Assembly (NCBI GenBank): GCA_051294905.1
Contig: CM119384.1
Span: forward strand, 992,001-1,056,000
Direction of reading: 5' to 3'
Source of the DNA: Botryllus schlosseri
Taxonomy: Eukaryota
DNA: 64,000 bases
Each line of letters opens with the position of its first letter. The stretch's first letter is position 1. The translations under genes were made by a program, and so were the position numbers. Below, piece by piece: positions 13,301 through 63,700 of the stretch. The notes under the pieces were generated by a model, which saw only the letters and a list, made by a program, of their open reading frames with translations, was not told where the DNA came from and ran no database searches.

Positions 13301-13499
13301 TATTGTAAAAAATCGTTGTTCTATGGCCTATTTAGTATACACTGCCAGCAGAGTGGTCGGAGATATAGTGTCGAATTTTGATTCGTGAGCTATTTGCGAA
13401 GATTTGAAAAATCCCACATGTACAATATTCATATCGAAATTAACCCGAATGTAACAATTGACAATGTTCTCTCCAATTTTCAACTAGTTGCTGACGATT

Positions 13500-23800: not shown

Positions 23801-26800
23801 ATCAATCTAAAAATAATAGATTGAGGCTAAGTTTGTGAAGTCACATTTTGTGATACAATTGTTGATCTGAAATTTTCTTTCTAATTCTCTACCTGTTGCT
23901 GACAATTACCTCTGACGAGTGTCAGTCGAAAATATTCGGGTTCATTTCAATATCAATATATCATTAAAAAATTCACGGCAACCTCATTAAAATCACTTTT
24001 TACTTGCGGAAGCAGGTCTTCACGTCAGAGTAGTAACCAAGTCACAAGGTCTCGAGTCACAAGTTCATCTCACTTTTATAATTTCGAGTCATTATCAATT
24101 CACCACCTAAGCAAGTCCGAGTCCAAGTCAGCTAGTAGAGTGACTTGAGGCCGAGTCCAAGTCATTATGTTCAGTTTTCAGTTCGACGCGCTTTTTCTAA
24201 CTCTGCTCAAGTGATATGACTCGCATTCATAATATAGTAATTTTCCTCAGTCTTTTAACAGTTTCTGACCCTATTTTCCAAGTATCAGGACTGATAGACG
24301 GATTACCAATATTGAGGTAACTTTCCTATTCTTCAAAGTAACAGTGAAATGTCTGTCTTGGCCGTACCAGTCTCGAATCATATGACTCGGTTAACCGAGT
24401 CATGCACACACACAAATACATATCGAGTCAATACCCATTTGAAACCATGACTCGAGTCATTACAACCCTGTCACACGATTACTTTGCTACCAATCACTCA
24501 TGGAAATACCTGAATGCTTTTCTCATTCGGTCCACGGTATTGGCCGGATAATTGGATCGTTTGCTGTCATCAAGAAAGGCTTTGGCGTAAGCCAACGGTC
24601 CAGCGTTTACCTGCCACATAATAGAGTTGTTTGGAATTCTGAGATGATACTTTAAATTTCTATATATACCTGAACGCTGACGGATCCTTGCAGGCGCAAT
24701 TGAAGTTTCTTCAAATCAACGGTTTTGGAATTGACCAATTCCTCGAGTTCCGAGCATTTTTGTTCCATCGCATCCAGTGCGACTTCGATCGGTTTCAACT
24801 CAAAACTACGTTGTGACGTCACTGTGATGCGCTTCTTGACGTAGGGAAAGCTGTGAGAAGCTGAAACACAAAAAATTATGCGATAATAGAATTTCATGTT
24901 TCACAATTAGGGTTTTAAAAATTTCACTGGCTATTTGATAAAAGTGTTAGGACTGATGAAAAAACGTTGAACAGCAAATTTGTCTCAATTTCAATAAACT
25001 AAAAACTTTCCGACTCCAACAGCTTTCCTTCTACATCTACAGGTTGTAATTAAACAAAATTTGGTCCGCAGTGCAAAATGAGGAGTTGAAGCTACGTTAT
25101 TTCTTTTGAAATCTGTTGTGGAAAAAATAGATTGAAAGTAACTTACTCGTCAATATAGTTTTTCTCTTCCATTGTTCGTCAATACCTCCTCTTGCTTTGC
25201 CCCCGGGAGTGAACGGAGTCTCGAACACAAAATGCTTCAGATTGTGAGCACGCTCGAAGCTGGTTTTGCGAAACTCAGACTCTTGCTCGTCAAAGTAAGG
25301 CTGGACGTAAGTCACTTGTATGTAAGCGAATTTCGGGTCCAAATCCGAGCGATTCACCTAATACATGAAGTTTGATAATAAATAATTGGCCAAGATAGCA
25401 TGCAGATGCGGTCAAAGTTTACTCGAGTAAAAGGAGAACTAGTGATTGATATAACATGACAATATTAGAAAAAATAAGGGTTTTTAGAATACTCAAGTAA
25501 TTACACAAACTACATTTGGTCCAGGACCAATATTTCCACACCGTCGCTGTTTCGTCAAAATTTACGACTCACTTTATTGGATTCCTGCACCAATTTGATG
25601 TTTTCTCTGCCAAATTTTGTTCCGTACATGTTCTGCAGTCGCATCGAGATTTCAGAGAGCTGAGTCAGCTTTGGTTCCTGAAAGACACAAATCCATGTTT
25701 CTTAACCTTTTATCTATCACAGACTGGGAATATTGATATCATTCTAATAGCTCACAGTCTTTCTATTTTATTTCATGTACGAGCAAATGAAGTGACTGTA
25801 AAGCTGATCAATTAAATGCTGTGAAGTCCATTGCCATCTGGTCTATTTGATACCTGAAAGCTACCAGATAACTAAAATATGCCACTTTCGCTTGTGATCT
25901 GAGGCGCGCGCTGAAAATAAGACAAAGGTAGGACAAGTCAGAAAATAGGGACGCATGCTTTACTTTTATGGTTATAGTGTCGACATTGGCCTTTCATGGA
26001 CCATCGTCAAACCATGAGCAGGCGTTACCTTGTAGATGTATTCTCTGCCGTCTTCGTCCTCGAAGAATTGCTGTCCGTAAAAGGCCACTCGGAAATAAGT
26101 GCCCAGCATTCGCTTGCCAGTTCGGTTGACCTCGACCACTTTGGTGTATGCGTTCCTCAATGTCTCGTAGATGTGGATCAGACCCTGTTTGGGAAAACAT
26201 TGCCAAAACTCATTCATCACCGTCACGGGCCTACTCTGGATAATTACCTCAAAATCACGTTTCTTCTCGAAGAAAGGTATCATCATCCGGTAAACACCGG
26301 CCAGAAGTTCGTACCGTTCAGCCGTATGCAAAGCAGACACACATTGTCGCAGAAGATGGATGAGGACATCCTAAACAATCAAAATGTGGATTACAAAAAG
26401 CAGACATTGTTAGTAGTAAATCATCAGCAGCGTAGTAGATGCAAATATTTTTGGAATAAATAAAAAATAAAAATTTTCTTCACCTCGTTATATTGAACGT
26501 CTTGCATCCCCGTATCTTCCTTGATGGCGGATTCCTCCTTCTCGACATTCGGCGAAATAGCACGGAACGCGGAACAGCCTTTGCTTATAAAGCCTGGTCG
26601 GAAAAATAAGTTCAAAGTATACTAAAACAGGTTATAGGCCTGCCGTCACTTGAAGAGTTAGACACCCCACCCCACCCCACCTACTACCTTTTCCATATGT
26701 AGTGCCTACAATCAAACAGGTGTAAATTGACAAGCAATATCGATATTGTAGCAGAGCCATAGAATCCGTTTACGAAATAATGCATTCTGTTTGGCATCAG

Positions 26801-29800
26801 CAATAGGCAGAGGTGGTCATTAACTAAGTATTTCTAATTCCTCGGTAGGTACTAGGAACTAGAGTGGTCATTACGGTTGTAGAAAAAGAACCCTTTTTTC
26901 CAGATTTCAGAGACTCACTGATTAAATTATTAGGTTGTTAAAAAAACGCTGCACGCCAAATTTAGCTCAATTTCCACCAGTAGAAGCCGCTGCAGAGTCA
27001 ATTGCAACTTATAAATTAAAAAAAGAAGAATTGGAAATTTTACTGTCGAGTTGTCTACAAACACGATGCAATTTGATGCAATTCCAACCCATAAAAGTGA
27101 AGTTATTCAAGTTTTTCCATTCATAATTCTGGGATTTCCCACTCTAAATGCTATTTTTGCATATAAACAAGTTTTAACTGCAATCACTTTGCTTCTATTG
27201 GTTAGTTTTGCCTGTTCTTGTAGGCAACTCAACAATTTCACGGGGTTGGCAGTAAAATTTGAAACTTTTTGAGCAATATTTTGCGTGCATCATTTCGCGG
27301 GCAACTCAACAATTTAATCAGTGAATCCCAGGAATCTGGACAAAAAGTTGTTCATTTCTGACCACCTTTGCCGTAAAGTCTGTCGCTGTTGTAACGTTGA
27401 CATGCAACTCACTTTTCGTATCAATTTCAGAAGCAAGACAAAGAGAATTGTTCTCCTTCCCTTCCTCGTTGCTACCCGATTGTTGCGTCACAGAGAAAAA
27501 TCTCGATATAAACCCCCCACCGCTACTCTCAGACGACGGTCCGTTAACGTGCTTTCCTGACATCCGTGCAAAGTTAGTCAAGCATGCAAAGGTCAAAGAT
27601 CACAGGGTGAGATTTGCATATAAAGTGAAAGTGTATAGTTTTTCTACTATTGTGAAAAATTTTTGGGCCTTTCTCTTCAGAAAGACACTCTATCCGAACC
27701 GCAGCTAAAAGATTTTCACTAAAGATGCTGTCCCAGTCAGACCAATGAAATCTTACAGTCTATATTTCAAGGTCAACATAATTTTGACACTTAATATCGG
27801 TTGTAGCATACTACCACCAAAAATCGAAAAATCTAGCCAATATAATTCATACTATAATGAGATCATAGTCACCAATTTCTAGTCATGTTCCAAAGAATAA
27901 TTTCGAGACAACCAATGCAATAGGGTAACCCGTGCAATATGAAAAAGGAGTTTTTTTGAACGAGCTTATTGGCCAGTCAAATATCACTTTAAAATTGACC
28001 AACGAGATGCTGAGAATACTTCCATTTTTTTGATAGTACAATTACATCATGCTACTATTCTACAATGTGTGTGCAGCACACACTTCTATTTAAATCCGCA
28101 AGGCTGTTAACTATAGCATAAAGGCAAGCACTTTATTACTAGACAGTAGACATGCTGGCCACCCAATCGCCCAAAATCATGCAAAATCACAGCAAAATGC
28201 CGTACCTGACGCTGGCGTTTTGGCGTTATCTTTAATATCTGGCATTGAGTCAAGTTCATTATTTAGGAGAAATAACAAGAACTTGAACGATAGCGTACTA
28301 ACAATCAACACCCACCCAATTCAAGGATTCATTTTCGTACTGAATTCAAAATCGATATATCAAGTCAAAATGATATCAAAATATGTAATCTAGTTCAAGT
28401 TATCTGTATCATAGTTAAAATATGGATATACTGACCTTTTCTCTTCAAATATTCCGCCACTAGTGCGGCGATGTGGATGTAACACATTGCAGCCTGCAAT
28501 TGAACAGATTATTTGAAAATGGATACATTTGTGAATCTCACTGTCTTACAGAACAATAATATGAAATTGTGAACAGGTTCATTATATCGTATGTATTTAA
28601 AGATATATGGTCGCAGTGGAATCAAAGTGGCTTTATGTCCATTTTAAAATTGGTAGGAAATCAAGTATTTGTAAAATTTTCACGTTTTTCGGCCATATCC
28701 ATTTTTATGTTTGCCGCATTGTTTCAAAGTTAGCCACGGCCAAGAATGGGGCCGAAATGTTTTGTACAAATATTCGATTTTTTAGCAATTTGAAAAATGG
28801 ACATAAGCTCTTTCATTCCACAGTGATGATATTCTTATTTATATAATAAGATTTCATTTAAAATATCATATGGTCATTTTCCTATAACATCCAGGATAAC
28901 ACACTGAATGCCATGGATATTTATTTCAAAACCAGTCTAAACACGGAGCCTATGTCAATAATAACCGGTGTCATTATCGTCTACGATCTAGCACAAGACA
29001 TTAGCAAAGAATTGACACGCTTAGCAACGTTGTCTTCGCAATTTTGAACTTGTTTTAACAGAAAATATACCTGGAACATTGGAACAACCACGTAATTGTA
29101 CACCTAGATACCTTTGGAGATAGCTGCAAAAATAGCCACTAACGACGCGTGAAATCAGAGTGAATCTACCAGACACAAACAAGTCGACATCTCAATAATC
29201 GAGTCGCAAATAACAACACTAATATCAGATCAAACGGGTCATCCAGGAGTGCAATCATATATAGTCAATAGGGCTGTCTGAATTTTTTTTTCTTGATTAA
29301 ATTGTTAGGTTGCCTAAAAAACCGATGCAAACCAATTTTAGCTCAATTCCAACTGGTAGATGTGAACGCACAGGAGTTTGAAAATTTTGAATTTATCAAG
29401 AAAATATTTCAAATTTTACTGTCAACCCTGTGAATTTCTTGAGTTGTCTGCAACAACGATGCAAAACAACATTTTACGCAAGTCCAACCCGTAGAAGAGA
29501 AGTCATTTGAGTGTTTCATCCATAATGCTGGGATTACCCACCGTCCGGGGTAATCCGAAATTTTCAACTGCAATAACTTCTACCAGTTGGGAGTGAGCAA
29601 AAATTGGGATGAATCATTCTTTTAGACAACTCAACTATTTCATGGGGTTGACAGTAAAATGTGAAAATTTTTTTCAAATTTAATTTTATAATAAATTCAA
29701 AATTTTGAAAATAATGTATCTTCACATCTACCAGTTACAATCGATCCAAATTTGGCGTGCAGCGTTTTTTTTAAGGCAAACTAACAATTTAATGAATGAA

Positions 29801-30116
29801 TCCCTGTAATTTGGAAAAAAGGGTATTTTGAAGCAACCCTTCTGACCAGTAGTGACCACCTCTGTGCGTAAAAACATTAAATTCAAAATCCCGATCTTAC
29901 TTCAGAGTAATTCTTATTCTTCTCGTGAACCTTGGCCATTGCTTCCAGCCAGGTCTTGCGTAGTTCAGGTGTAGCCGCGTAGGACTTGGCCAGGCTGTAC
30001 TGCAGGTCCACCAGCATTTCCGGGTCGTCCTTGTGTTCTTTCATGGCGGCCGTGGCCATGAGAACGGTGCGGATGCGTTTGGTCAGGTCTTTGACTTCGA
30101 TGTGGAACACGGAGTG
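20847..30116 (-). CDS. DOCK9: DOCK-D family (DOCK9/10/11, zizimin) GEF, 3' exon block including DHR2: 29901-30116, 28436-28493, [28206-28238, 27413-27556 optional], 26484-26593, 26248-26370, 26029-26184, 25573-25677, 25147-25357, 24670-24860, 24510-24610, 23615-23753, 20847-21059
   Basis: Recognisable DOCK9/10/11 peptides: [113 protein letters not shown]. All junctions are GT-AG and phase-consistent. The symbol stands for the DOCK9/10/11 group. Confidence 0.97.
21827..23327. mobile_element. 1.5-kb non-autonomous hAT element with nested repeats, in the last DOCK intron
   Basis: 15-bp TIRs CAATGTTCCCTCTAA...TTAGAGGGAACATTG; perfect 8-bp TSD GTCATAGG at 21819-21826 and 23328-23335. Confidence 0.9.
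23908..23941 (+). ncRNA. Minimal type I hammerhead ribozyme motif, apparently intact (Penelope-like type)
   Basis: ACCT-CTGACGA-G-TGTCAGT-C-GAAA-ATAT-TC-GGGT: CUGANGA and GAAA core, 1-bp stem II, palindromic stem III (AATATT), UC cleavage site at 23936-23937, 4-bp stem I. Confidence 0.6.
24027..24470. mobile_element. MITE family rich in GACTCGAGTC palindromic subrepeats (other copies about 5945-6130, 17700-17985, 61370-61495)
   Basis: Recurrent ATGACTCGAGTCAT and AAGTCCGAGTCCAAGTC units; imperfect CAG(A/G)GT..TAA termini. Confidence 0.6.
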
Positions 30117-35999: not shown

Positions 36000-36546
36000 G
36001 GTGTCCGGACAATACCGAGAAAACCATTACCGAGAATGCCATTACCGAGAATGGACACCACCGAGAATGGACATTACCGAGAATGGACACCACAGAGAAT
36101 GGACATTACCGAGAATGCAATGTATGTAATGCAGGCATGTTATGCATATGCACATGTCGTGTGAGAGCATCACGGCGTTGCCACATTCGGTATTGATGCT
36201 CAGGTATACATTTCTCGACAACGTCAGTCCCAGTAAGCTATATTCTTGACATTGGTTATTTTCGGTAATGTCCATTCTCGGTGGTGTCCATTCTCGGTGA
36301 TGACCATTCTCGGTAATGACCATTCTCGGTAATGACCATTCTCGGTAATGTCCGTTCTCGGTAATGGCATTCTCGGTAATGGCATTCTCGGTAATGTCCA
36401 TTCTCGGTAATGGCATTCTCGGTAATGTCCATTCTCGGTAATGTCCATTCTCGGTAATGTCCATTCTCGGTAATGGCATTCTCGGTAATGGCATTCTCGG
36501 TAATGTCCATTCTCGGTAATGGTTTTCTCGGTATTGGTATAGAACC
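36000..36546. mobile_element. Foldback/Mutator-like non-autonomous element whose TIRs are tandem arrays
   Basis: Arms of 15-16 bp units (CATTACCGAGAATG..) in opposite orientation; GG...CC termini; 9-bp direct repeat CCCATGAGG at 35991-35999 and 36547-36555. Confidence 0.85.
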
Positions 36547-39500
36547 CCCATGAGGCGGAGAGTTACAAATATGCTCACTAACATTACAGTTACCATATGA
36601 TTTGTCGTCCTTTTTCAGGAGATCGAAAATGTCCTCCGAGAACGCCTAAATGTCCCCGTTTTGAGAAATAGCCCTCCCTTATAGTTATAGCTTTGACAGT
36701 CCGGCTAATGGACACTGGACACGGACAGTCATAAAAACCACCATACATGACATGGATTTTAAAAAGTGTCGCCTTTCCGAATCTCAAAATATGGTAACCA
36801 TACAGCTTCTAATTTTGCGGAGCAATAAAGTAGGTTGACCCAGGTTTTGAAAATACTATAGTGAACAAGAAATGCCCACAGCAGTTTAGGACCGCCTATT
36901 AGACTTGTTAAAAAATAACTTTTTTAGATTTTCGCGGCTATTACGGTAGCTAAAATTGTTGAGTTGGCTAAAAAAATCGTGCGAACCAAATTTGACTCGA
37001 TTCCGTTCGTAAATTTTAAATTTATATAAAAAATAAAATACGTTTTTTAAATTTCAATTTTATATAGCTATCCAAATCGCAGTACGCTTCAATAACAAAA
37101 ATTAACCAAATAACCTTAACGCCAGATCGCTACATCTACTTCCATTCCGGGCTGTGTATGAACGAAAATTCAGACAATTCGGTTTCCTGGCTTTGAATTA
37201 TGCAGAATACCAATGATATCGGATCATATTTTCAGCACGGATAATACAGATTTGTGATTTCTTACAGATACCGCGTAACTATGTTTGTTTATATGTGTTT
37301 GGACAGGAAAATCGAAAGTGCGCAAACGTACATACTCAACCAATGACGGTTGAACTGTAACGATGAAATTTGATCGTTTTTTATCGGGAAATTATTGTCG
37401 ACGACTTCTCGTTGTCCAAAATACTAACATTTCGAAACTCCGTGAAGAAAAGTGAGTCATATTTCAGTCATTCGAAAGATTTCGCGAGCTTAGAAAGTAT
37501 GTTTGCGAAACCGAATTTTGTGCATTGCAGACAAACCGGGTGATATTTGCGCGAAAATACGAGGAAAGCATGCATGTCCGCTGATTCATATGGTGACGTC
37601 ACAACGGTCGACACAAATGGTGACTCGTAGGGTAGTAAGCAACTATGAGTCATAATTGGGGAAATGTAATATTTTCGGCTTTCCAAATAGATTAGAATTA
37701 GAATTATAGCTGGGAAGTTTTTCTTCCAAATTAGATTAGAATCGTTTCACTGAATTCGCAAAAACTTCGAAAGTGTAAAAAAATTCGTATCAATTTCATT
37801 CTTATAAGAAGGAGAATTCATGGAAAATGTCTGTACACCAAGCTTAGCTTGTTTTGCATTTTCAAGAAAACAAATTAGAATACAATGAAAATGAGGGCAG
37901 AGAAACATTTGAAAAATTACATTTCAATGAGATTTCCGGCATTTCGATTTAATTAGTCTCTAAATTAGAATACTGGGTGATACTGATGTTTTAACGAGGT
38001 GGTTGAGTATTGAAATTTTGCAATTTTTAGTTGGTTTTAGGTTGAGATAAGGCCGTTAGGAAATACAAGAGGTACCATGCTAATATTCCCAATAAAAATC
38101 AAAGAAAATTAAAAAATTTGCTATTTTTTTCTAATTTTCGACTTACAAGTATCGTTAAAATCTAATACTTGCGTCAAACTGAGTTTTATGATTACCTACA
38201 ACATTTTCATAGCGCTTGACCCATGATTTATATCCCGGGCCGCCGTCAACACAATTTAATAACCCGATATTACATCCGGAATTCAAAACCATACGCGCTT
38301 TCAACACGCAGCACTTGAAACGAATTCGATTGCCAATAAAATGCCACATATTTGTTGACACAGCTTAGGAGGCTAGTTCAACGTTGATGACGAAAGAATG
38401 CGCGTGAGACCGGTCGAGATTACATCAGCGGCAGAGAGAGCTTCAATATACAATTGAATATTATATTCGTGTTGAAATATTCGAGTTTATTTCAGTATGA
38501 ATATATTATTCAATCGTATATTGAACACTAAAGCCCGAGCAATAACTAGCTGCGAATGAAAGTTCGCACCTAACCTAGTTAAAATTCTCGGAATAGTTGT
38601 GATAGTTACAGATTTCCAAGGCGAGCGCAATTTACAGTCGATAACCCGCGTAAATAAGGGATTTTCGTTCGGAAAAAATGCAAGTTCGAGGCGATACTAA
38701 ACAACGAAAATCACGTTTTCGAAACATAAACACCGGCTTTTTCGCACTGCCCCGCAATCGAAGTATCATTATGTCTAAAACACGGTCATTATAATGCACG
38801 TAACGTCACACGCACGTAATCGTAAGAAACACCGATGTTTTTGAAATGCGAGGTAAAAAAAAACAATTACATATCCAGTCAACAAGTTTAATTTTTCAAA
38901 CCAGAACGTTAGTCAGTTAGTGAGTTGAGATGTATTTTTCACGCTGATTCCAAACCTTATTTTGAGTACATCACATTTTCAAGATAGCATCGAATTTGCA
39001 TTTTCCGGAAATTATTGAAAAAAATAAACATATATTTTCAAGAGACTTGAAAATGGTGAGCGTATGATTTTTTGTATTCTCCACACATTTTGAAGATAGC
39101 ATCGAATTTGTATGAGCTGATTTCATGATGAGCTATTTTTATGAGACTTGAAAATGTTCATCAGATGATATTTTTTGTATTTAACGAATAAAAAGATAAA
39201 GAAAAAAAATCTGTTTTCATGACGCTTCAAAATACTGAGCTGTTGTACACGTGACTGAAAATTTAAAATGCGGACATCTCGAAGTCCTGGTGTGCTAGCA
39301 AAATAATACGCCCGTTTTCGGAATCAGGAACAAAAACTCTTCAGGAGTCACTTAATTTGCTGTTGACCAGAGAGTTCAAATAATAAATTGATGCACTTTT
39401 TTTTGTGTTACGCGCTTAATCATACGTCAGCTCCAATGCATTATAGGGTGTCTGCATACTTTCGTCCTTACGCATTTGTATTAACTTTCCATAAACACCT

Positions 39501-52900: not shown

Positions 52901-55900
52901 TCGTCACAGGGGTCCGTCCTAATCTACAAATTCGGATGTATTAAGACACACCAGGCATTGTAAGCGCAACGCATACTCAGTTCGGAGATAATCGAGATGA
53001 CCTGTTGTAGGTTTTATGGGTTACGAAATATGAAATATCTGAGAAGTCGTGGTCGACCCACTCCCTAAGTTGCACAAAAAGCGCGCGTTGGATTAGTTGT
53101 GCAACAAGCAGTTTAATTTTTGCGGTTAAAATGGTTTTTAGACTCTGAAAATTTATGCCGCGCGTCGCACACGCCAGGAAACCGCACTTTACGGCAGTTA
53201 ATTCCGTTTTTTCGTCGCCCGTGTACCTTTCAAACCAATCCGTCAGCCATATATCAAACAATCGTTAACGAATTCACTCAATCATTACGTAGGTAAACTC
53301 TGAGAAATTAGTTTTCGCCGAGCATTTGAACCGTAATGCAAATCATGCGACCTCTACTTACAGAATCAATAACAAAACGCGAGAGAAGTCTTCAAAACGA
53401 GAGAACAAATCGAAAAAATGCGCATCAAAATATCGCTTCATTCAAAGCAGATCGCGAATCGATATCTCCGATCAGACAGAGATGCTAGCCTTTGTATAAG
53501 GGTGGTAGCAACATATCACGCCGCGAATTGGCCTAATTTTGTAGCCTTTTGGTCGTTGGCGACGTAACTGGAACAGGTTAGCCACAACTTTCAGTACGAG
53601 GTGCCTTATCAGAAGATTTATAGCGTAAATTGATAAAAAATAGAGTAGCATTATACATAGAATAATATAATCATATTGATATGTTCGGGTTTATTTCAAT
53701 ATGAATACATTATTCAGTTGTATATTGAAGTTCTGTACCTTAAAAAGCCTTTCCAAACGGCATTACTTTATATTATTTTTCTCTCAGTGTGTATAGAAGT
53801 ATATTATACATATCCAAGGTCTTGGTATCAAGTATGTGATTGAAAGACGAGTATAACTCGTTTTGAACCCGTCCTATATTTCGCTTCGCTAAATTTTGTG
53901 GTGTTAAGAGAACTAATGAAAATATTAATACTGAGGCTAGTTCAACGCCAGGTGATTTTACTGTGTAATCTGAAACTCTCCGTATAGCATTGTGCGGTAA
54001 CATGTTTAAATATGATAGTAAATTGCGTTGATAAATTGCGTCGTAAGACTCAAAATTGACACAACGCAATTCGTTTGTAGGAGGCTCTTGGAGATGTGCG
54101 ATTGTTATTTTCGGAAATATTTTTTTCAATATGAGCATATTATTCAGTTGCATACTAAGTCGTTCGAGAAATCGAAAACTTTCACTCTAATTGCATGGCG
54201 AAGCATATGATCCCCAAGGCATTACACATCTGCCATGCGTTATGTGCAATTCCACGGAACATGAAAAGGGTTAGCCCATGTAATTTACTTCGGATTAAGG
54301 AACATACGCCTGAGCTTATAAGATATATTTAGCTGTGAAACTAATATTTATGAAACGCCAGACTTACTGCACGATAAAGATAGCCGCCGTTACGAGGTAT
54401 ATTTAGATAAGAAACGAATATTTTTAAAACCGCAAATATAGCCGGTCTTATGAGATCTATCTAGTAATGTAAAGGATATTTTATGAATCATACTTTCTGC
54501 TATCATAAAGATAGCCATTATTATGCGATATTAATTATGAAACGAATATTTTTGAATCGGAAAGATAGCACAGCGTGCCCCCGGCGTAAATGTCTTAAGA
54601 TATACGATGTTACAGTTTTAACCGTTAGACAGAAACTATAAATTAAATATCTCGCGCGTCACGTCCTGTCAGAAAATACCGATCCACATAATATTCCATA
54701 AAGTGGGAATTTCGGAAATCTAAATTGGCTGCAGTTTACGGTGATAGCCGTTCTGCCACGGCAGACATTTCGTCAGATAATACGGTAAACGTGACTGTCC
54801 TGCCTACTCTGTAAGCGAAGATGCAGCCATCACAATCGTGACTCAGAATAATAACATTCTGAAGAGTTTAACCGCACAGTGACTACAGTACACACAGGGC
54901 TGAAAAACTAGAAAATTGTCATATTTGCCAAACTAGATTATAATCAGAATCATTGAATTCGCAAACATTTCACAAATTAGATCGCCAACATTTCGCCCCA
55001 ATCAGTCTACTTATTATACAACTAGAATTATCTACTAATCCAAGTGAAGTGTAGTGACACCTTTCCAGACAGACCACAGCTTGATATCAGACTTTATTGT
55101 AACTCAGGTGACAAATCGCACATTCAAAGCGAACGACCAAGCGACGGCCCTTTCGTTTATTATTTATGATGTCACAGTAGCGTTGTTTAAACAAACTGTA
55201 GATTTGTTCCTTGATAAGCGCGTCTGGTCGAGAGAAGCTATTATTATTAACTTAACTGTATCAGAAAGCAGTGTACTGATAGTGGCTAGAAGGCTAGCCA
55301 AGATAGTTAGGCCTAGCTTTCAGCACAACGATGTAGCCATGCTATGAAGTAGCCGAGGTAGGATTTATTATCAATAGGAAACCAGTAGCTCTGAAGGAAT
55401 TTCGTTTCACTGGCGTGATTCTTTAATATACAATTGGATTATATACTGATATTGAAATAAACCCGAACATATTCTGATAAGATAGCTTACGAAGCTTATT
55501 TGTAACGATGACGTATATCACGCGCTAAGCAGTCTACACAGGAGTCAGATATTCACTAATCGAGATATTAACCAGACATTTCTAGGATACGCGCGTGACC
55601 GAATTCAAATCACGAGAAACCGATATGATGTGATATGGCAAGCTTACGCGATACCTAATATGACATAGGAATAACTAATTGAAGAGATTCTAGGAGGTAC
55701 AGAACTTCAATATACAATTGAATAAATAAATTGCTAGCTAGCGCGATCAGCCTGTAACTGAATAAGACCATATTGAATGTTGGATGAGCCTGGGAGTTTA
55801 CTGTAAATAAAGCAAGTCGCGGTAAGACAAAACGGAAGGAACAATGCGTTCTTGCAACACGCGGTAACATCATTCTTACTAAACAGCAATAGCGCGCATT

Positions 55901-56560
55901 GACAAGGAAATAAACCATACCAAATAGAAACTGCATGACAGCAGTAAGCTTACCGCGCCATTGAGGAGTGGAATCTACATTAGACGCCTTGCAATCATAG
56001 GTTAGATTCGTTTGCTATCAGCAGCACATCATCAAATTGTAACATGATTCCGGGAATAGACCACAATATGCAACTTACATTGAGATGAAATGAGATTATA
56101 CTGTCTGGCTACTACTAGTTAGTTATTGTAAACTGCAATATTTCCAAACACCGTAGTATATCAATTGAATATTCTGGTTTTCAGCTTGGTGCATAAGAAC
56201 GCATATAGAGTATTAGTAATTCGTCAGAACGCTGTATTGCAGTACGTCTTCGGATAGGAACCATCAAGGATAACGTAATAACGCACCTATAGACTTTCGG
56301 TAAGTAAAATTTGAATTTTATAAGCGCAGTCTATAGACAGCAGATTTTGGCAATTTTCAGCTGTTGCAAATTAGATTACAATTAGAATCACAGCTACGAA
56401 GTTTTTTTTTCCCAAATTATGGTCGACATAGAATTATACCTACACAGTTATTTCCAAATCAGATCAAAATTAGAATTATAGCTACACAGTTTTCCAAATT
56501 ATATTATAATTAGAGCTATTTAGTCTGATTGAGATAGTATTTTTACATATTTCAGATATC

Positions 56561-59500
56561 ATGGGGGATCTGTTTCACGAAAAGGCGGACCGCGACCTGT
56601 TTTTCAGCTCGTTCGGGACCGACATCGGGTCGCGGCTGGACCAGCTCAAGTTCGAATTCGAGGAAATTGAAAGCGGGGTGAGTGCTTGCTCCATGCTCAC
56701 GTAGCAGTTAAGGAGTATTGAATAAAATCGCCAAATCATCAAATACCATGCGACTATATACTCCCGCAGTTGAATGTTAACATTCCGTCAAGTTCAACTG
56801 GTATGCAGTCGTTTGCTGTGGCGCGTGAATTTTATAACCCTATGTCATAATATCGATATAAAACTTATTTGAGGCTCGTGTTTTGGTACGGTCCGGCCCG
56901 AAAAATGTAAATTTGCGGCACGCCGAAGGAGAAATATTCCGTAAACACACCGCTTTTTTTCAAATGTTATTCTTCGACATGCTTGGGTGGCAGCGTTTTA
57001 AAAATAATTGCCCACAGAAACCTGCGCAGATTTAAACTGTATTCCGTTTGGGAATAGTTGAATTAAATACAATTGTAGTTGTCTAATTACACTAATTATA
57101 CCGAAATGCCGGTACCGTAACTCTTATTCTTATCTAATTTGTGAAATGTTTCTATGCGGTAATTGCATCTAAACTTTCAGAATGTTATTGCATTTCCAAA
57201 AATAGATGCATTATTCATTGCCGTCACCTTTCCAATACATCATAAGACCGAGCAAGTCCGCCTTCAAAATACCAAATTTAGCCGCCAGAGTCTTAGCTTG
57301 AATCGTGGACACGATTTTTAAAGACGAGGTTATTTATTATTGACGCCATACTCAAACCGCGACCGAAAGTAATTGATCACAGCGGATTTATACGAAAAAT
57401 TCGGATCATTTCGCGCATATAGTAATATTATTACAGAAACCACTACAAGCTATACCTTGCAGTATATACTATGCGGTTTCCATTTAAATCACGAACCAAA
57501 TATCTGAATACACGCGCGCGCGTTACAGTTGCAAGACGAAACCGTACGACGTCACAATACGAAGACAATCACGAGAATAACCTGTCTTCCCATTTATAGA
57601 AAAACTTTCCATGAAGTACTAATTAGCGATATCAATCGATACTGCGCTACGCAGCACCTTACGAAATGAGTTTACAAGCCAAATACGGTTAGGTATGTCA
57701 GGAATTGAGAGTTTATTGGAATTTAAATCCGAATGTGCGATGGTGATTTGCTCTCTTGCCGGAATTTCTCATTATTTCACTAATACATGCATGGATCAAT
57801 AGTATATTCAGGTTTATTTCAGTATGAATATACTAATCAATTCTACCATCATTAATTTAACTTGCTCGCACTAGAAGTAGTTAGCGGGATAATATTCAAA
57901 CGAGTCGCGTTTTCGTCGACCGTTTCCAAAAAGCATTCACATGGAATAAAATCTACCCGGTTTTTCAGCATTTCATAACAATACCGCGTTTTTTTTTCAG
58001 AAAATAAAACAGCCAGTGAAATCAGAGGACGCGCCAGATTCGAACGGCCTCGAAAGTTTAGTTCAAAACGAAATCGAAAAGAAAATCAACGATGGTGAGA
58101 TGTTTAACCTGTTGACTCGTTATATATAGTACTTTTACAAACTACGAATATAGTTAGTTGACGAATGAATAGTTCTAGTTCTAGTTATGAGTTTTGAAAA
58201 GTGAATAGTTCTAGTTCTAGATCTAGTAACAGTCTGTACAAGTCTGTTCCTTACATGTCGCCTATTCGACAGACAATGTCCAGACAAACAACGTAATTAA
58301 TATTTCCTTCATGCTCGTTTCAGACAGCGATTCCGACAAGGAAAAAGACAAAGAACACAGATCTCGGACGTACACGATGATACGCGCCATTTCCACAGTC
58401 AGCCTCATGGCAAATTTCAAGGTAGGCAGACTAAATAATTCTAGTTGCCTAATCAGATTAATCAAAGATACATCCTGGTAATCTAATCTCATCAAATTTC
58501 TCAAAGTCTTGCGAGTTTTGTAATACAAATTCTAATTTGGAAACAAAAAGTGTAGCTATCATTCTAATTCTCATCCAATTCCAGAGCGGATTCTGGCGGA
58601 AAAAACGCGGGTCGAAAAAAAGCACAGGGTCGGACGATACCAGGCGAGGTTCCACGTCGTCGACGCCCGAGAATAACAACACTCAAGGCCTGCCCAAGAT
58701 CACAATCTCGGGAGACAGCGAAGGGAGGTCAACTATTTATTCAACGGTAAGACAGGAATTCATCGAAAAACTTCTTCGAACTTAATACAACCAAATACTC
58801 CAATTTTAACTCAATTCCAGCTCGTAGAAGCGAACATATTCTGGTTTTCATTCAAAATTCTTGGATTACTCGCACCAATAATTTCGCTTCTACCAGTATT
58901 TGCTGCGCATCGTTTTATTAGACTACTTGTCAACTAGATGGGGTAGAAAGTAAAATTTAAAATATTTTTGATAGTAATTACGAAATTTTCAACTGTGACA
59001 GCTTCACTTTTATTAGTCGGAATTCGGTTAAATTTGGAGTGCAACCTGGCAATTTTAGCTAATATCCGCAAAAATGTGAAGAAAAGTAGAATTTTTGAAC
59101 AGCCCCAATGGTCATATCTACATATTGTACCCGGGAACAAAGCATCCAAAAACAAAATCTTTGATTTTCAGGTCCCGCGAAAACCTAAAAACGCATCCCG
59201 CAGCCACACCATGTCACCCACGCGCACACGCTTGGGTAGTGACGGAGAAATTCCGGAACAGCTCCAAAGAACCGAATCAGGGAACGTATTCGTACCCCCG
59301 GTTATCATGGACGGAAAAGTGGTGCACGATTACCAGTACGCCACCCCGGAATTATCACCGAAAAAAGCGGAAGCCAACAAGTTCGCCAGGAGAAATTCCC
59401 TGTCTCGCCTGTTCCGAATAAGAAAGAGCCCGAAAAAATCGCCCAAAAAGGACACCACCCCCATCAAACATTTGTACGAGAAGACCGTCATGACCGCCAG

Positions 59501-59600
59501 CAACAACGAGTTGCATAGAGTGCAAGAAAACGGACATAGCGTAATCGTAGACGATGCTACTGCCAATACAATGCCGCGCAAGCATCTGGCGTCAACGTAA
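56561..59600 (+). CDS. Nested antisense gene in the DOCK intron, 299-aa low-complexity protein of unknown family. Coding exons 56561-56677, 58001-58094, 58324-58421, 58585-58746, 59172-59600
   Basis: Five GC-richer exons with strong pyrimidine-AG acceptors and GTGAGT, GTGAGA, GTAGGC and GTAAGA donors; phases 0,1,0,0 chain into a stop-free 900-nt CDS (MGDLFHEKADRDLFFSSFG...KHLAST*). Confidence 0.82.
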
Positions 59601-60763
59601 ACTTGCGAACTGCAAACTGAACTCGAACCGCGGTTTAAACGATCTGTCCCGTGTTCAGGCTCTGCTTCGAGCGAAGAAATGAACGACTCCGAAAATAAGA
59701 CTTGGTTTACGAGGTGTAACTCTCTCACATTACAAAAACACTGATACTTTTAAAAGACTGTTTATTTGGCTTTTACGAGAAACTGTTGTTGATTACGCCC
59801 GGAGGTTGTCAGTTACAAGGCAACCCTAGTAGGTTATGCCATGTAGTTTTTCAGGCGAAACTACTTTTTCTGCGATTTTGTAAAGCCTAGGTACTTTACG
59901 ACACTGATACTTTTGAAAGTGCGTTTAATTGGATTTTGGGGAATTTACAGCATCACTCTGCCCAGAGGTTATCAGTAACGGAATTTTCAGAGGAGACAGC
60001 GGTAATAATGTCTATCTTTGAAGAATATTACAACTAATTTTAGTGTGACTGGTCGTTTTGCGTTCGCAATTTTAAAACTAGCCACTGGTTACAGTTTTAA
60101 TCACCTTTACATTGCTTATGGGGCAGGGTATGCTCGCTATTGCATCGCGTAAAATGCTGTCGGTTAGGAACAACGTCTAATTTACACTACTATTCATATC
60201 GACGGAGGCGAAAATCTTCTGTAATTTATTGCTCTTGCCTTGCTAGCAAACAGTAAAACCGCATTCTTTTCTCTTTTTTACAATAAAATCTCAAAGAATG
60301 AGTACTGTCTTTTACCAACTATCTAACGCAGCAGAAGACAACTTTTAAGAAAGAAATTGCCCATTGATTACTATTTATAACTGAACAAGTGCTTTGAAAA
60401 GGTTCCAGCACCAGCAGTTTTAGTTAGCCTACAGCTGTAGTTGTGAAGTGAGTACTTCTATTTCAAGTTCTAGTTGCGAATTTTCAAAAATGAGTAGTTC
60501 TGGTTTTAAATACTTAATTCAAAAATGCTATTACAGTAACAGCGTAGTTTGGATAGGTTAAAGTTTAAACCAAGATTGTAAGCAGGACGTAAATAAATAT
60601 AGCATGACCTTCACGCTTAATGACTCGACTAGCGTCATAAACTCATGATCTTAAATATCATTAACTGATGTACTTTCAGCGACCTTGTCGATTCCTAATT
60701 TACAAGCTGATATGGTTTCATGAAACCACATTTGGTAGACTCAAGTTTGAAATCAAGTCCTAC

Positions 60764-63700
60764 CTGCATTCCCTTGTCGCTTTGAGCGTACGCGTTGATC
60801 ACGGAAAGCGAGTTTTGAAATCTGGAATTTCCGATTCCGCCTTCCTCGCTGATCAGTTGGGAAACGGCTTTGATCATCTTGAAAAATAAAGCCACACTTG
60901 ATTTTACAAGAAAGCGTGTGCATTAGGGCTATTCAAAAATAACTTCATTACCAATTATATAATTGCACACCGTAAATACTATATTTTTCAAATCCGAAAT
61001 TTTCAACTCAAATAACTTTCGTTCTACTGGCTGGAATTGAGCCGAATTTGATATGCATCATTTTTATAGACAACCTAACAATTTTATGGGTAGCCAGTAA
61101 AATTTGAAACATTTTTATATTGATTCTTAGTAAATAATCCAAAACTTTTTTAAAAATAGCAAGGCTTCAATAGGTTGTAATTGTCCCAAAATTGGTATGC
61201 AGCGTTTTTTTAGGCCATCTAACAATTTCATCAAGTAGTCAGTAAAACTTGAAGAATATTCTTCAACTTTTTATAATAAATCTAAAATTTTCTACTCCTA
61301 TAGCTATGCTTCTACAGATTGGAATTGAGCAGGTAAAAGACAGTTTTATGCCTATTTTTCAACTGTCGATCCTGATACACGAGACTTGAATAAGTCATAT
61401 AGAATGACTCAAGTCTTATAATTCGACTCATAAGCAATAACTCGAGTAGAAGTCGAGTAAATACACAAATTTACTCGAGTAGAGTCATTTTACATTTTTG
61501 ATAAAAAATATTTCGAATCATTATAACCCTGCCCTTACCTGTAAGTGCGACCTCACAAAGCTTTTGGAGGCCGTGTTGCTGGAGGAGTATTCGAAATTGG
61601 ATCTCATAAGGAGGTAGAGCAAGGCGCATGCTTCTGCTCTGGTACTTGAGAGGCGAGAGTTGCAGCATTTCAAGGCGTGGTAGATGAGAGAAGCGCACAG
61701 GTCTGCTTTTCCTTTGAACAAAGCCGCTTGGAACTGGAAAAATAAATTTTTGGGTTCAAAAGACCATACCTGTACAAACTATCAATCTGGTTCGTTGACG
61801 GCCCAGTAGCTACTGTCATTGTAGTAGTTCTAGTTCTAGTTGCGGGTTTTGAAAAGTTTGTAGTTTTAGCTCTAGTTGTAATTGCGAATTTTGAAAATTC
61901 AGTAGTTCTAGTTCTAGATTTTGCAAAGTGTAGTTCTGGTTCTAGTTGTAATTGCGAATTGGAAAAGTGACTGGTTCTAGTTCCACTTCTACATTTTAAA
62001 AAGCGAGTAGTTCTAGTTGTAGCTCTAGATTTTGAGAAGTATGTAGTTCTGGTTGTAGTTCTAATGGCGAATTTTGAGAATGAGTAGTTCTAGTTCTACT
62101 TCTAGATTTTAAATAGCTGTGTAGTTTTGGTTGTAGTTGTAATCGCGAATTTACAAGTGAGTAGTTCAAATTCTAGTTCTAGACTTTGAAAAGTGTGTAG
62201 TTCTGGCTGTAGTTCTAATGGCGAATTTTGAAAAGTAAGTAGTTCTAGTTCCACTTCTACATTTTGAAAAGTGGGTAGTTTTAGTTCTAGTTCTACATTT
62301 TAAAAAGCGAGTAGTTCTAGTTGTAGCTCTAGATTTTGAGAAGTATGTAGTTCTGGTTGTAGTTCTAATGGCTAATTTTGAGAAGTGAGTAGTTCTAGTT
62401 CTACTTCTAGATTTTGAAAAGTGAGTAGTTCTAGTTCTAGTTCCAGATTTTAAAAAGTGAGTAGTTCGAGTTCTAGTTCTAGATTTTGAAGTGTGTAGTT
62501 CTGGTCGTAGTTGTAATTGCGAATTTTGAAAAGTCAGTAGTTCTAGTTCTAGTTATGATTATTGAAGAGTGAGTAGTTCTAGTTCTAGTTGCTAGTTTCG
62601 AAAGATATCGAGTTCTAGTTCTAGCTGCGCATTTTGAAAATCCAGTAGTTTGCACGAGTCAAGAAACAATGCCTCTCTGCAATAGTGGTTGAAGATATGT
62701 TTGGGTTGGAAAAGTTAGTTTGGACATTTGCAGTCTCCTGTAGGCCGGAATCAAGTCTTATACCTCATAATTCCTCAATTAAAGAGTCCCTACTAAGATC
62801 GAAAGTCGAAACTAGCTCTTTTCTCGAATTCCGATTTGCATTTCGAACACTACCAACGGACGAGATTACCTTGCACATGAAAAGACGCAGGGACGCAAAG
62901 ACATGCTTCAAAACGCATTCCGACTGGCTGATTTCCAGAAACAGGAGAAATATCGACGACACTCTTCTCATGAGAGGGTTGTCACCTTCGTCTTTTTGAA
63001 GAATTTTCTGCACATACATACCAAAAATTATTTCCAGCCAAAAATATGCAAAAATGTACATTCGTTATTTTTGTTGTGGTCCCTGAAACAAAGGGCACCA
63101 CTACAGTATGAATGATGTAGAAACTCCGAATATAAAGTGCCAGATACAATAATCACCGATAATCAAACAATATCACTCATCGGAATCAGCTTAGCAGTGC
63201 TGTTCAAAAGGAACTTTTTTTCCAAAATTTTACTGGCTACTTAATTGAATTGTTAAGTCGCCTAAAAAATCCTGCACACATATTCTGGCTCAATTGCAAC
63301 CTATAGAAGCAGATAATGATGGGGAGATCTATAATAAATATTTGATGAATTTGCCACCGTAAATACTATTTTTTTCGAATCAAAAATTTTTTACTCCAAT
63401 AACTTCGCTTCTCCATGTTGGGATCGAGCCAAAATTTGTTGTACATCGTTTTTTCCAACAACCTAAGAATTTCGTGGGGTGGCCAGTAAGATTTGAAAAA
63501 AATATATATTTATTTTTATTAAATATATCCAAAATACTTTTCATTATATAGCAGGTTGGAATCGAGCCAAATTTGGTGTGTAGGCATAAATTAGGTAACC
63601 TTACAATTTTATCAAGTAGCCAGTACAATTTGAAAAAATATATTTTCTAAAAGCTCTACTGTGCATCGTTGACGCCTCAAAAATACTAGAACCAGAAAAT

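What the first reader, a model, noticed from the sequence alone, without database searches (positions are those of the whole stretch)
56556..59600. Unrecognised 299-aa gene nested antisense in a 30.6-kb DOCK-D intron, with a signalling-motif-rich tail
Seen: a clean 5-exon ORF. It is Ser/Lys/Arg-rich with no domain I recognise. It has PKITIS (58693-58710), matching the calcineurin-docking PxIxIT consensus; basophilic kinase sites RRGS and RRNS; Tyr motifs IYSTV, YQYATP and LYEK; and SPKK repeats typical of CDK sites. Known: vertebrate DOCK1 and DOCK2 host antisense nested genes (INSYN2A/B). I know of no such gene for DOCK9/10/11. Inference: a disordered scaffold or adaptor, possibly lineage-specific.
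Basis: partly seen in the sequence, partly recalled or inferred. Interest (0 to 1): 0.7.

Follow-up and report, generated by a model that had tools for sequence, protein, structure and literature searches.

The report
Ascidian-only disordered gene nested in DOCK-D
This is a real, expressed, 299-residue protein-coding gene of an ascidian-only, uncharacterised family. It has sat antisense in the same intron of a DOCK9-like gene in at least three ascidian lineages, and its function as a phospho-regulated disordered adaptor is only inferred.

Summary
Five GT-AG coding exons (56561-59600, + strand) give a 299-aa ORF. RNA contigs from three runs and raw RNA-seq reads show all four coding junctions. 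They also show two 5'UTR exons and a spliced leader joined at 56185. All 13 listed within-species variants in the CDS are synonymous (p = 3e-9), so the frame is under purifying selection.

The host is a DOCK-D gene on the minus strand, and the intron is 30,647 nt.

The protein matches no Pfam, PDB or ESM Atlas family. It does have relatives: Styela clava LOC120327984 (54% identity), a Phallusia protein named after Ciona LOC100176279, and four unnamed transcript or metagenome proteins. No named relative lies outside ascidians. In Styela and in a phlebobranch-like contig the gene lies antisense beside the same host exons; the contig holds both flanking exons, so there the intron is shown to be the same.

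AlphaFold2 predicts mostly disorder with four short structured islands. Three blocks are conserved in every sequence that covers them: PPV..DG....DYQY, R..S-hydrophobic and P-[LI]-[KR]-x-LY. The N-terminal helix is kept in all five sequences that include the N-terminus. The PxIxIT-like motif is kept in four non-phlebobranch sequences and is absent from all three phlebobranch sequences.

This is a real, lineage-restricted gene, already annotated elsewhere as "uncharacterized", and its function is still unknown. Interest is moderate.

The parts
55146..55357 (+). Upstream non-coding exon (5'UTR, cis-spliced form). Its 5' end is not determined.
   Evidence: A contig of run X1 joins 55357 to 56185 across a GT..AG intron of 827 nt. 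The raw reads of X23 do not show this junction.
56185..56299 (+). 5'UTR exon. Its acceptor at 56185 also receives the spliced leader.
   Evidence: The junction 56299/56556 (GT..AG) is seen in 2 contigs and 15 raw reads. Raw reads also join the 24-nt stolidobranch spliced leader to 56185: two equivalent placements are listed with 8 and 9 reads.
56556..56677 (+). Coding exon 1. The ATG is at 56561 (A at -3, G at +4). It encodes aa 1-39, the conserved N-terminal amphipathic helix.
   Evidence: The helix block is conserved in all five sequences that include the N-terminus. AF2 predicts a helix at residues 4-37 of the Styela ortholog, pLDDT about 70-77.
58001..58094 (+). Coding exon 2, aa 40-70: a variable acidic linker.
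   Evidence: The junctions 56677/58001 and 58094/58324 are seen in contigs of 3 runs, with 9 and 18 raw reads. The stretch is poorly conserved.
58324..58421 (+). Coding exon 3, aa 71-103. It holds R-x-x-[ST] followed by the RAISTVSLMANFK segment.
   Evidence: AF2 predicts a low-confidence helix here in the ortholog.
58585..58746 (+). Coding exon 4, aa 104-157. It holds the basic cluster FWRKKRGSKK, RRGS, the PxIxIT-like LPKITIS (58690-58710) and TIYST.
   Evidence: The junctions are seen in 3 runs, with 5 and 13 raw reads.
59172..60078 (+). Coding exon 5 plus 3'UTR. The CDS ends with the stop at 59598-59600. Conserved blocks: RSHTMS (59199-59216), PPVIMDG..DYQYATP (59295-59348), RRNSLSRLF (from 59388), SPKK x2 (59427-59450) and TPIKHLYEKTVM (59457-59492). 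RNA coverage reaches at least 60078, and an AATAAA lies at 60282.
58781..58804 (-). An exact 24-nt copy of the stolidobranch spliced-leader sequence inside intron 4, on the opposite strand. It lacks a GT donor and the SL-RNA body. It is probably a relic, and it explains the "opposite strands" joints and the very high depth at this spot.
60764..60883 (-). Host DOCK-D exon just upstream of the host intron. It ends ...SDKGMQ|gt, and its 5' border is approximate.
   Evidence: Its orthologs lie beside the nested gene in Styela (L002) and in L003.
29901..30116 (-). Host DOCK-D exon just downstream of the host intron ([22 protein letters not shown]...). It is the start of DHR-2 lobe A.

Best explanation
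Shown:
- The stretch is a bona fide single-copy protein-coding gene. It has seven exons, five of them coding, on the + strand.
- At least part of its mRNA is SL trans-spliced at 56185.
- It encodes a 299-aa basic protein (pI 9.5) that is Ser/Lys/Thr/Arg-rich, has no cysteine, and has no hydrophobic stretch long enough for a transmembrane segment (signal peptide not tested separately).
- It belongs to an uncharacterised family whose named members are all ascidian (Styela clava LOC120327984; a Phallusia protein named after Ciona LOC100176279 = KH.C1.568).
- The gene lies antisense beside the same host DOCK-D exons, just before DHR-2, in this genome, in Styela and in a phlebobranch-like contig. 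The contig holds both flanking exons. The arrangement therefore predates the stolidobranch/phlebobranch split.

Inferred:
- The protein is intrinsically disordered and acts through short conserved islands. These are an N-terminal amphipathic helix of about 34 residues, a small hairpin PPV[IV].DG....DYQY..P, and a C-terminal helix [ST]P[LI][KR].LY.[KA]TV[LM].
- It also carries two or three conserved basophilic phospho-acceptor sites: RS.T[MLV]S and R..S[LFMV][SA][RK][IL][LF]. These fit AGC/CaMK-type kinase sites and the canonical 14-3-3 motif.
- The most likely mode of action is a cytoplasmic adaptor switched by phosphorylation.
- In the non-phlebobranch lineages a PxIxIT-like calcineurin docking site may recruit the phosphatase that resets it.

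My odds: real conserved coding gene, above 0.95; disordered motif-based adaptor regulated by phosphorylation, about 0.55; functional calcineurin docking, about 0.25.
For: Gene model and transcription:
- GT-AG model giving 299 aa.
- All junctions seen in contigs of 3 runs and in raw RNA reads.
- It is the only ORF of 43 aa or more on the transcript, with upstream in-frame stops.
- The spliced leader joins at 56185. The leader sequence is identified and in PMC3795323.

Selection and copy number:
- 13 of 13 listed CDS variants are synonymous, binomial p = 3e-9.
- The gene is single-copy in its own genome.

Relatives:
- Homologs reach E 1.7e-24 and 7.3e-22 with exon 5 alone.
- The profile search gives Styela at E 2e-121, Phallusia at 1.2e-36 and a JGI contig protein at 1.9e-17.
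- Family alignment with the conserved blocks.
- All four coding intron positions are shared with Styela.

Nested position:
- In Styela the gene lies antisense inside a DOCK-D gene carrying PH, DOCK_C-D_N and TPR_DOCK9.
- tblastn places the orthologous host exons next to it in L002, and on both sides of it in L003.

Protein properties:
- AF2 gives mean pLDDT 51.8 and pTM 0.20, with local helices and a hairpin at the conserved blocks.
- pI 9.5, GRAVY -1.0, maximum 19-residue hydropathy 0.73.
- Motif scan across the family.
Against: - No binding, localisation or phosphorylation data exist. The only literature trace is one line in a Ciona differential-expression table.
- Motif matches of this kind are common in disordered S/T/K/R-rich sequence.
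- The PxIxIT-like motif is missing in all three phlebobranch sequences, and no LxVP motif is conserved.
- Only eight family sequences were found, four of them of unknown species, so the conservation statistics are weak and not phylogenetically independent.
- The AF2 alignment is shallow (11 rows), so low confidence does not prove disorder.
- Table 3 lists only the best-supported variants (147 are not shown), so the 13/13 count is a sample.
Confidence: 0.55

Rival explanations
1. The nested protein is functionally tied to its host. It would be a regulator or partner of the DOCK-D/Cdc42 pathway, and the host-guest arrangement would be kept because the two genes are co-regulated or because their products act together.
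For: The gene sits beside the same host exons in three ascidian lineages, although tunicate genomes are otherwise heavily rearranged (that last point is my own knowledge). A YxxP site, the Crk/Nck/Abl SH2 type, is conserved in 7 of 8 sequences.
Against: Nested genes are hard to move out of an intron, so conserved position needs no functional link. No CRIB or other GTPase-pathway domain is present. No co-expression data could be obtained. Neighbourhood alone is weak evidence.
Confidence: 0.12
2. It is a basic nuclear or chromatin-associated protein. The SPKK-type motifs and K/R clusters would bind DNA or RNA, as SPKK motifs do in sperm histones, rather than serve as CDK sites on a cytoplasmic adaptor.
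For: pI is 9.5. The tandem SPKK-SPKK lies next to RIRK, and there is an RKKRGSKK cluster. The first SP.K is kept in the five stolidobranch-type sequences.
Against: The SPKK block is absent in phlebobranch orthologs, which have ENGSSG there. The window protein has no K[KR].[KR] NLS match. The family-wide conserved blocks are not basic.
Confidence: 0.12
3. It is a very diverged member of a known metazoan family, for example an INSYN2-like or other nested-gene family, whose similarity is below the reach of sequence searches.
For: Tunicate proteins evolve fast and disordered proteins lose detectable similarity quickly. From my own knowledge, vertebrate DOCK1 and DOCK2 host INSYN2A and INSYN2B. DOCK6 and DOCK7 host ANGPTL8 and ANGPTL3 (PMC4172915).
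Against: No Pfam hit at E up to 10 for the window pieces or for five homologs. No PDB hit. Atlas feature scores were 0.84 or lower, with low recognition. The phmmer search of 1.84 billion representatives and the profile search returned no named relative outside ascidians. The host subfamily (DOCK-D) differs from those of the known vertebrate pairs.
Confidence: 0.08
4. It is a non-coding antisense transcript whose ORF is fortuitous.
For: None beyond the absence of known domains.
Against: 13 of 13 CDS variants are synonymous. Protein-level homologs reach E 1e-121, with conserved blocks and conserved intron positions. CDS GC is 0.51 against 0.39 for the window.
Confidence: 0.01

Closest known systems
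Uncharacterized proteins LOC120327984 (Styela clava) and LOC100176279 (Ciona, gene model KH.C1.568; Phallusia mammillata A0A6F9DH4-type entry)
   Same: True homologs. The window protein is 54% identical to the Styela protein over 298 aligned residues and shares its four coding intron positions and its conserved blocks. In Styela the gene lies antisense in a DOCK-D gene, next to the same upstream host exons.
   Different: Lengths range from 299 to 346 aa. Phlebobranch members keep the N-terminal helix, the DYQY hairpin, the R..S site and the LY..TV helix. They lack the PxIxIT-like, TIYST, RRxS and SPKK elements, and their genes have fewer introns. None has a described function.
Vertebrate genes nested in DOCK introns: ANGPTL8 in DOCK6, ANGPTL3 in DOCK7 (PMC4172915), INSYN2A/B in DOCK1/2 (my own knowledge)
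   Same: A small gene lying inside an intron of a DOCK-family GEF, with the arrangement conserved across species.
   Different: The host subfamily differs (DOCK-D here). There is no sequence similarity: no Fibrinogen_C, ANGPTL or any other Pfam hit. The fibrinogen-domain ORFs in this window lie beyond the end of the host's DHR-2, not in this intron.
Calcineurin-docking PxIxIT proteins (NFAT, AKAP79, RCAN; yeast Crz1 PIISIQ, Hph1 PVIAVN; from my own knowledge)
   Same: LPKITIS, and VPIIKVN, PPDIKVN and VPIIQIQ in three relatives, fit the ELM-type pattern .P[^P]I[^P][IV][^P]. All sit at one aligned position in a region of low predicted order. The defined positions are kept while the wildcard positions vary.
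   Different: The motif is absent in phlebobranch orthologs. No LxVP motif is conserved. Binding is untested.
14-3-3 clients and AGC/CaMK substrates with paired RSx[pS/pT] sites in disordered regions
   Same: RS.T[MLV]S and R..S[LFMV][SA] are conserved family-wide. They match the canonical 14-3-3 pattern and the basophilic kinase consensus, and lie about 60 residues apart in a disordered chain.
   Different: Neither site has Pro at +2. Phosphorylation and binding are untested.

Membership tests
Ascidian LOC100176279 / LOC120327984 family (unnamed, no Pfam model) | Significant full-length sequence similarity | tested here: met
   Exon 5 alone gives E 1.7e-24 and 7.3e-22. The profile search gives Styela at E 2e-121 and Phallusia at 1.2e-36. 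The window protein is 54% identical to the Styela protein over 298 aligned residues.
Ascidian LOC100176279 / LOC120327984 family (unnamed, no Pfam model) | Shared blocks: the N-terminal helix F.(F/G)G.(D/A)(I/V)G..L..L.(F/L)E(F/Y), PPV..DG....DYQY, R..S-hydrophobic-[SA][RK][IL], and P[LI][KR].LY..TV | tested here: met
   The three C-terminal blocks are present in the window protein and in all seven relatives. The N-terminal helix is present in the five sequences that include the N-terminus; for P0003 it lies upstream in its contig L016.
Ascidian LOC100176279 / LOC120327984 family (unnamed, no Pfam model) | Nested antisense in the DOCK-D intron just before DHR-2 | tested here: met
   The window intron is 30117-60763. 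In Styela L002 the gene is followed by the two orthologous upstream host exons; the downstream host exon lies outside the fetched locus. In L003 the gene lies between host exons at 5270-5497 and 13180-13302.
Ascidian LOC100176279 / LOC120327984 family (unnamed, no Pfam model) | Conserved intron positions | tested here: met
   The Styela exon borders fall at about aa 40, 81/82, 114 and 170. These align with the window borders at 39/40, 70/71, 103/104 and 157/158. The phlebobranch-like gene has fewer introns.
PxIxIT calcineurin-docking proteins | Motif fitting .P[^P]I[^P][IV][^P] | tested here: met
   LPKITIS at aa 139-145, window 58690-58710.
PxIxIT calcineurin-docking proteins | Motif lies in an accessible disordered region | tested here: met
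   In the AF2 model of the Styela ortholog, residues 147-154 and 156-162, which cover most of its VPIIKVN (154-160), have pLDDT below 50. This is a prediction only.
PxIxIT calcineurin-docking proteins | Motif conserved across orthologs | tested here: inconclusive
   It is kept at the aligned position in the window, Styela, P0002 and P0003 sequences. It is absent in Phallusia, P0004 and P0007.
PxIxIT calcineurin-docking proteins | Second docking motif (LxVP) | tested here: not met
   The window, Styela and P0002 proteins have no L.[LIVAPM]P. The only hits are non-aligned ones in P0003 and P0007.
PxIxIT calcineurin-docking proteins | Physical binding to calcineurin A | not testable with these tools
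   No calcineurin sequence was available by reference, and complex prediction was not run.
INSYN2 (FAM196) nested genes of DOCK1/DOCK2 | Sequence similarity to the family | tested here: not met
   No Pfam-A family of any kind at E up to 10, for the five window pieces or for five homologs. I made no direct comparison with an INSYN2 sequence.
INSYN2 (FAM196) nested genes of DOCK1/DOCK2 | Host is a DOCK-A gene | tested here: not met
   The host exons match DOCK9/DOCK10 best. The Styela host carries PH, DOCK_C-D_N and TPR_DOCK9.
DOCK-D subfamily (host gene) | DHR-2 closer to DOCK9/10/11 than to DOCK6/7/8 | tested here: met
   DOCK9 scores E 1.7e-27 and DOCK10 3e-18, against DOCK6 at 1.6e-6 and DOCK8 at 9e-5. 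In one search, DOCK10 scores 4.3e-23 against DOCK6 at 2e-14.

The most novel reading that the evidence does not exclude
The protein is an ascidian-specific signalling node. Its basophilic phosphosites are written by a PKA/CaMK-type kinase, read by 14-3-3, and, in non-phlebobranch lineages, erased by calcineurin docked at the PxIxIT-like site. Its long-standing residence in the DOCK-D intron reflects functional or regulatory coupling with this Cdc42 GEF. That would make it a taxon-restricted regulator grafted onto a conserved cytoskeletal pathway.
Probability: 0.1. Interest if true: 0.6.

Novelty: new member of a known kind. Interest (0 to 1): 0.35.

Why it matters
This record turns a "sequence-only" guess into a well-supported gene. 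It gives a precise transcript model that includes SL trans-splicing. It shows that an orphan, disordered protein family has stayed locked in one intron of a DOCK9-like gene in at least three ascidian lineages.

That makes the locus a clean case for two questions: how taxon-restricted disordered proteins persist under purifying selection, and whether host-guest gene pairs are functionally coupled. The conserved islands give direct targets for mutagenesis in Ciona or other ascidians, where electroporation and CRISPR are routine.

It is not a new principle. Nested genes in DOCK introns and motif-driven disordered adaptors are both known kinds.

Tried and rejected
- Pfam on the five exon peptides and on five homologs at E up to 10 gave nothing credible.
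- A PDB sequence search with the family profile gave only a chance hit, BICD2 at E 0.97.
- ESM Atlas feature and structure searches on the Styela and Phallusia proteins scored 0.84 or lower, with TM 0.25 or lower, so they gave no lead.
- The search for homologous proteins with the exon-5 open frame (region 69-210) found nothing. The family was reached only through the exhaustive phmmer search.
- An own-genome search found no paralog.
- The metagenome-contig scan failed with the full alignment, which had no conserved stretch. With the stolidobranch sub-alignment it found no further relative.
- N-myristoylation is rejected as a family feature. Gly2 is present in the window and Styela proteins, but not in P0002, Phallusia or the P0003 contig.
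- A PP1 RVxF match (RDLFF) occurs only in three sequences and lies inside the N-terminal helix, so I rejected it.
- I considered whether the "opposite strands" joints in the reads meant an inversion or an antisense RNA. I rejected that in favour of SL trans-splicing plus a relic SL copy in intron 4.
- Complex prediction was not run. No calcineurin, 14-3-3 or full-length window protein was available by reference, and neighbourhood alone does not justify a host-guest job.
- dN/dS against Styela was not attempted, because at about 54% amino-acid identity synonymous sites are expected to be saturated.
Full report

Yes. Reading the + strand and assembling exons 56561-56677, 58001-58094, 58324-58421, 58585-58746 and 59172-59600 gives 900 nt. 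That is a 299-aa ORF plus stop, with canonical polypyrimidine-AG acceptors and GT donors at every border. The composition is as described: S 36, K 30, T 24 and R 22 of 299. The CDS is much GC-richer than the window, 0.51 against 0.39. PKITIS is at 58693-58710 as stated, and RRGS, RRNS, IYSTV, YQYATP, LYEK and three SPKK are present.

**2. Is it transcribed and spliced as proposed?**

Twenty public runs of the same organism hold 11-33% of the sampled words of 56400-60000, about the exonic share. I laid three contig sets from three studies, plus one raw-read RNA-seq run, on 54300-60200.
- All four coding junctions appear as GT..AG skips in contigs of all three runs. In raw reads they have 9, 18, 5 and 13 reads.
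- Two further upstream junctions appear. One joins 56299 to 56556 (two contigs, 15 reads). The other joins 55357 to 56185 (one contig).
- On the resulting transcript of about 1.7 kb, the 299-aa frame is the only ORF of 43 aa or more. It has in-frame stops just upstream of the ATG, and the ATG has A at -3 and G at +4.
- RNA coverage reaches at least 60078, and an AATAAA lies at 60282.

**3. Spliced leader**

Raw reads also join 56185 to a 24-nt sequence that matches 58781-58804 on the opposite strand. Two equivalent placements are listed, with 8 and 9 reads. Forty-five reads carry, directly beyond 58804, the reverse complement of what I recognise from my own knowledge as the SMART template-switch oligo.

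That 24-mer occurs 561 times in the genome, against 0 for the control pattern. In 8 of 12 sampled copies it is followed by GT, and most sampled copies also carry a GGACC....GGTC stem about 45-55 nt further on. That is the layout of SL RNA genes.

It is letter for letter the spliced leader reported for the stolidobranch ascidians Botryllus, Halocynthia and Polyandrocarpa. Shorter or one-letter-different versions are listed for Styela plicata, Boltenia and Herdmania (PMC3795323, table 1 and supplement).

Three things follow:
- The organism is a stolidobranch-type ascidian.
- The mRNA is SL trans-spliced at 56185, which independently fixes its strand as +.
- The copy in intron 4 is a relic without donor or SL-RNA body. 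It explains the odd joints and the depth spike there.

**4. Is the frame under selection?**

Thirteen variants listed fall in the CDS, and all thirteen are synonymous. With 198 synonymous and 699 non-synonymous sites, the chance of that is 3e-9. The caveat is that the table shows only the best-supported differences. Synonymous diversity is high, at about 0.066.

**5. The host**

Minus-strand exons at 24652-30116 match DOCK DHR-2 lobes A, B and C. They match DOCK9/DOCK10 far better than DOCK6/7/8. The exon ending ...SDKGMQ|gt at 60764 and the exon starting ag|[17 protein letters not shown] at 30116 flank an intron of 30,647 nt. The "30.6-kb DOCK-D intron" is correct. The nested transcript spans 55146 to about 60280 and overlaps no host exon.

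**6. What is the protein?**

No Pfam family matches the five exon peptides. The word-indexed search with the exon-5 open frame found nothing. The exhaustive phmmer search of 1.84 billion representatives with exon 5 found four proteins, with E from 1.7e-24 to 7e-5.

One of them, P0002 (322 aa, from a transcriptome contig), is full-length. It led to Styela clava "uncharacterized protein LOC120327984" (P0005, 346 aa). A family profile then added two more proteins:
- a Phallusia mammillata protein named after Ciona LOC100176279;
- a protein on a JGI metagenome contig.

In the MAFFT alignment the window protein is 54% identical to the Styela protein, 51% to P0002, 29% to P0003 and 21-25% to the phlebobranch sequences. 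The gene is single-copy in its own genome.

P0003 as predicted lacks the N-terminus. Its contig L016 carries the conserved N-terminal exon upstream of what looks like a retained intron.

Searching PMC and bioRxiv for the locus and gene-model names gave a single mention. KH.C1.568 is listed as 3.3-fold up under the caspase inhibitor Z-VAD at mid tail regression in Ciona, with no functional comment (PMC8495957).

**7. Conserved nesting**

In Styela the gene lies antisense inside a 2234-aa DOCK gene carrying DOCK_C-D_N, PH, DOCK-C2, TPR_DOCK9 and DHR-2. The orthologs of the two host exons upstream of the window's intron lie just beyond the gene's 3' end, as in the window. The downstream host exon is outside the fetched locus.

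On the phlebobranch-like contig L003 the gene (8169-10822, +) lies between the orthologous host exons at 5270-5497 and 13180-13302 (both -). That is the same intron, here only 7.7 kb long.

All four coding intron positions are shared between the window and Styela. The arrangement therefore predates the split of stolidobranchs and phlebobranchs.

**8. Anatomy of the protein**

AlphaFold2 on the Styela ortholog with the family alignment gives mean pLDDT 51.8 and pTM 0.20. Only local elements are predicted:
- helix 4-37 (pLDDT about 70-77);
- a weak helix at 93-110;
- a hairpin at 218-225;
- helix 279-291 (about 77).

The Atlas model of the Phallusia protein is equally poor, with pLDDT 0.45. The proteins are basic (pI 9.0-9.9) and strongly hydrophilic (GRAVY about -1). 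They have no hydrophobic stretch long enough for a transmembrane segment.

Three blocks are kept in every sequence that covers them, and the N-terminal helix is kept in the five that include the N-terminus:
- the N-terminal amphipathic helix;
- PPV[IV].DG....DYQY, usually followed by ..P, which gives a YxxP in 7 of 8 sequences;
- R..S[LFMV][SA][RK][IL][LF];
- [ST]P[LI][KR].LY.[KA]TV[LM].

A second site, RS.T[MLV]S, is kept in all seven sequences that cover that part. It and the R..S site fit both the basophilic kinase consensus and the canonical 14-3-3 pattern.

Lineage-limited elements are these:
- The PxIxIT-like motif reads LPKITIS, VPIIKVN, PPDIKVN and VPIIQIQ. P, I and I/V are fixed while the wildcard positions vary.
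- T-I-Y-S-T-[VI].
- R-R-x-S-T-S-S.
- The SP.K repeats.

All of these are missing in the three phlebobranch sequences. No LxVP motif is conserved. Gly2 is not conserved, so myristoylation is not a family feature.

**9. Most likely mechanism**

Shown: a conserved, selected, expressed coding gene for a protein predicted to be disordered, with short conserved islands.

Inferred: it works as a motif-driven adaptor whose state is set by phosphorylation of the conserved R..S/T sites. 14-3-3 binding is a likely read-out. The helices and the DYQY hairpin are likely folding-upon-binding contact sites. Calcineurin docking is possible in the non-phlebobranch lineages, at about 0.25. It cannot be the ancestral, family-defining function.

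The rivals are in their own section: coupling to the host DOCK-D/Cdc42 pathway, a nuclear basic protein, or a diverged member of a known family. None is excluded, and none has positive evidence beyond position or composition.

**10. Comparison with what is known, and novelty**

The true family is the set of ascidian "uncharacterized LOC" proteins. Membership is met on sequence, blocks, intron positions and nested location.

It resembles the vertebrate DOCK-intron guests only in being nested. ANGPTL8 lies in DOCK6 and ANGPTL3 in DOCK7 (PMC4172915). INSYN2A/B lie in DOCK1/2 (my own knowledge; PMC6135963 shows only adjacency). There is no sequence relationship, and the host subfamily differs.

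The gene models exist in public annotation of relatives. What is new here:
- the validated model in this genome;
- its SL trans-splicing;
- the family definition;
- the deep conservation of the host-guest arrangement.

That makes it a new member of a known kind, of moderate interest.

Neither was used.

Noticed in passing
window 58781-58804 (-); own genome, e.g. L004-L015: The 24-nt stolidobranch spliced-leader sequence occurs 561 times, dispersed over the genome on both strands. Eight of 12 sampled copies are followed by GT, and most also carry a GGACC....GGTC stem about 45-55 nt further on, as in SL RNA genes. The flanks are otherwise unrelated. SL RNA genes here therefore look dispersed rather than tandem. 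The window copy lacks the donor and the stem.
   Followed up: partly
window 55690-55725, related to 55430-55467: A sequence of about 31-36 nt has word depth around 5000 in all three RNA contig sets, and dozens of raw reads run on into unlike sequence on both sides. It belongs to a repeat family that is abundant in transcripts. A similar copy lies 260 nt upstream.
   Followed up: no
G000:C2:8135210-8137217 (+), outside the window: A complete DHR-2 lobe A match (E 9.4e-49) lies inside an uninterrupted open frame of 2003 aa, with lobe C about 1.3 kb further on. It looks like an intron-poor or retrocopied DOCK gene. A third DOCK locus lies on C13 at about 1.10 Mb.
   Followed up: no
window 2345-3610 (-), 14060-14365 (-), 6153-7358 (-): Fibrinogen_C-domain ORFs (E 2e-12 and 7e-11) and EGF-like ORFs lie on the host's strand, beyond the end of the host's DHR-2 (lobe C ends near 23630). 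They are probably separate fibrinogen-related genes downstream of, or at the 3' end of, the DOCK-D gene. This is curious because vertebrate DOCK6/7 host angiopoietin-like genes.
   Followed up: partly
window 36042-36596 (-) and 61673-62552 (-): Long open frames made of tandem peptide-like repeats (TENGHYREWTLPRM units and [11 protein letters not shown] units) lie inside host introns. They are most likely minisatellites rather than genes.
   Followed up: no
window 56561-59600: Within-species synonymous diversity in this CDS is very high, at about 0.066 per synonymous site across four runs. Some contigs also differ from the reference by many intronic indels.
   Followed up: partly
L016 (Logan SRR25569774 contig), nt 75-190 and 377-1324: The database protein P0003 is an N-terminally truncated prediction. 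The conserved N-terminal helix exon lies upstream in another frame, separated by what looks like a retained intron of about 190 nt. The rest of the gene is one exon, as in the phlebobranch-like locus L003.
   Followed up: partly
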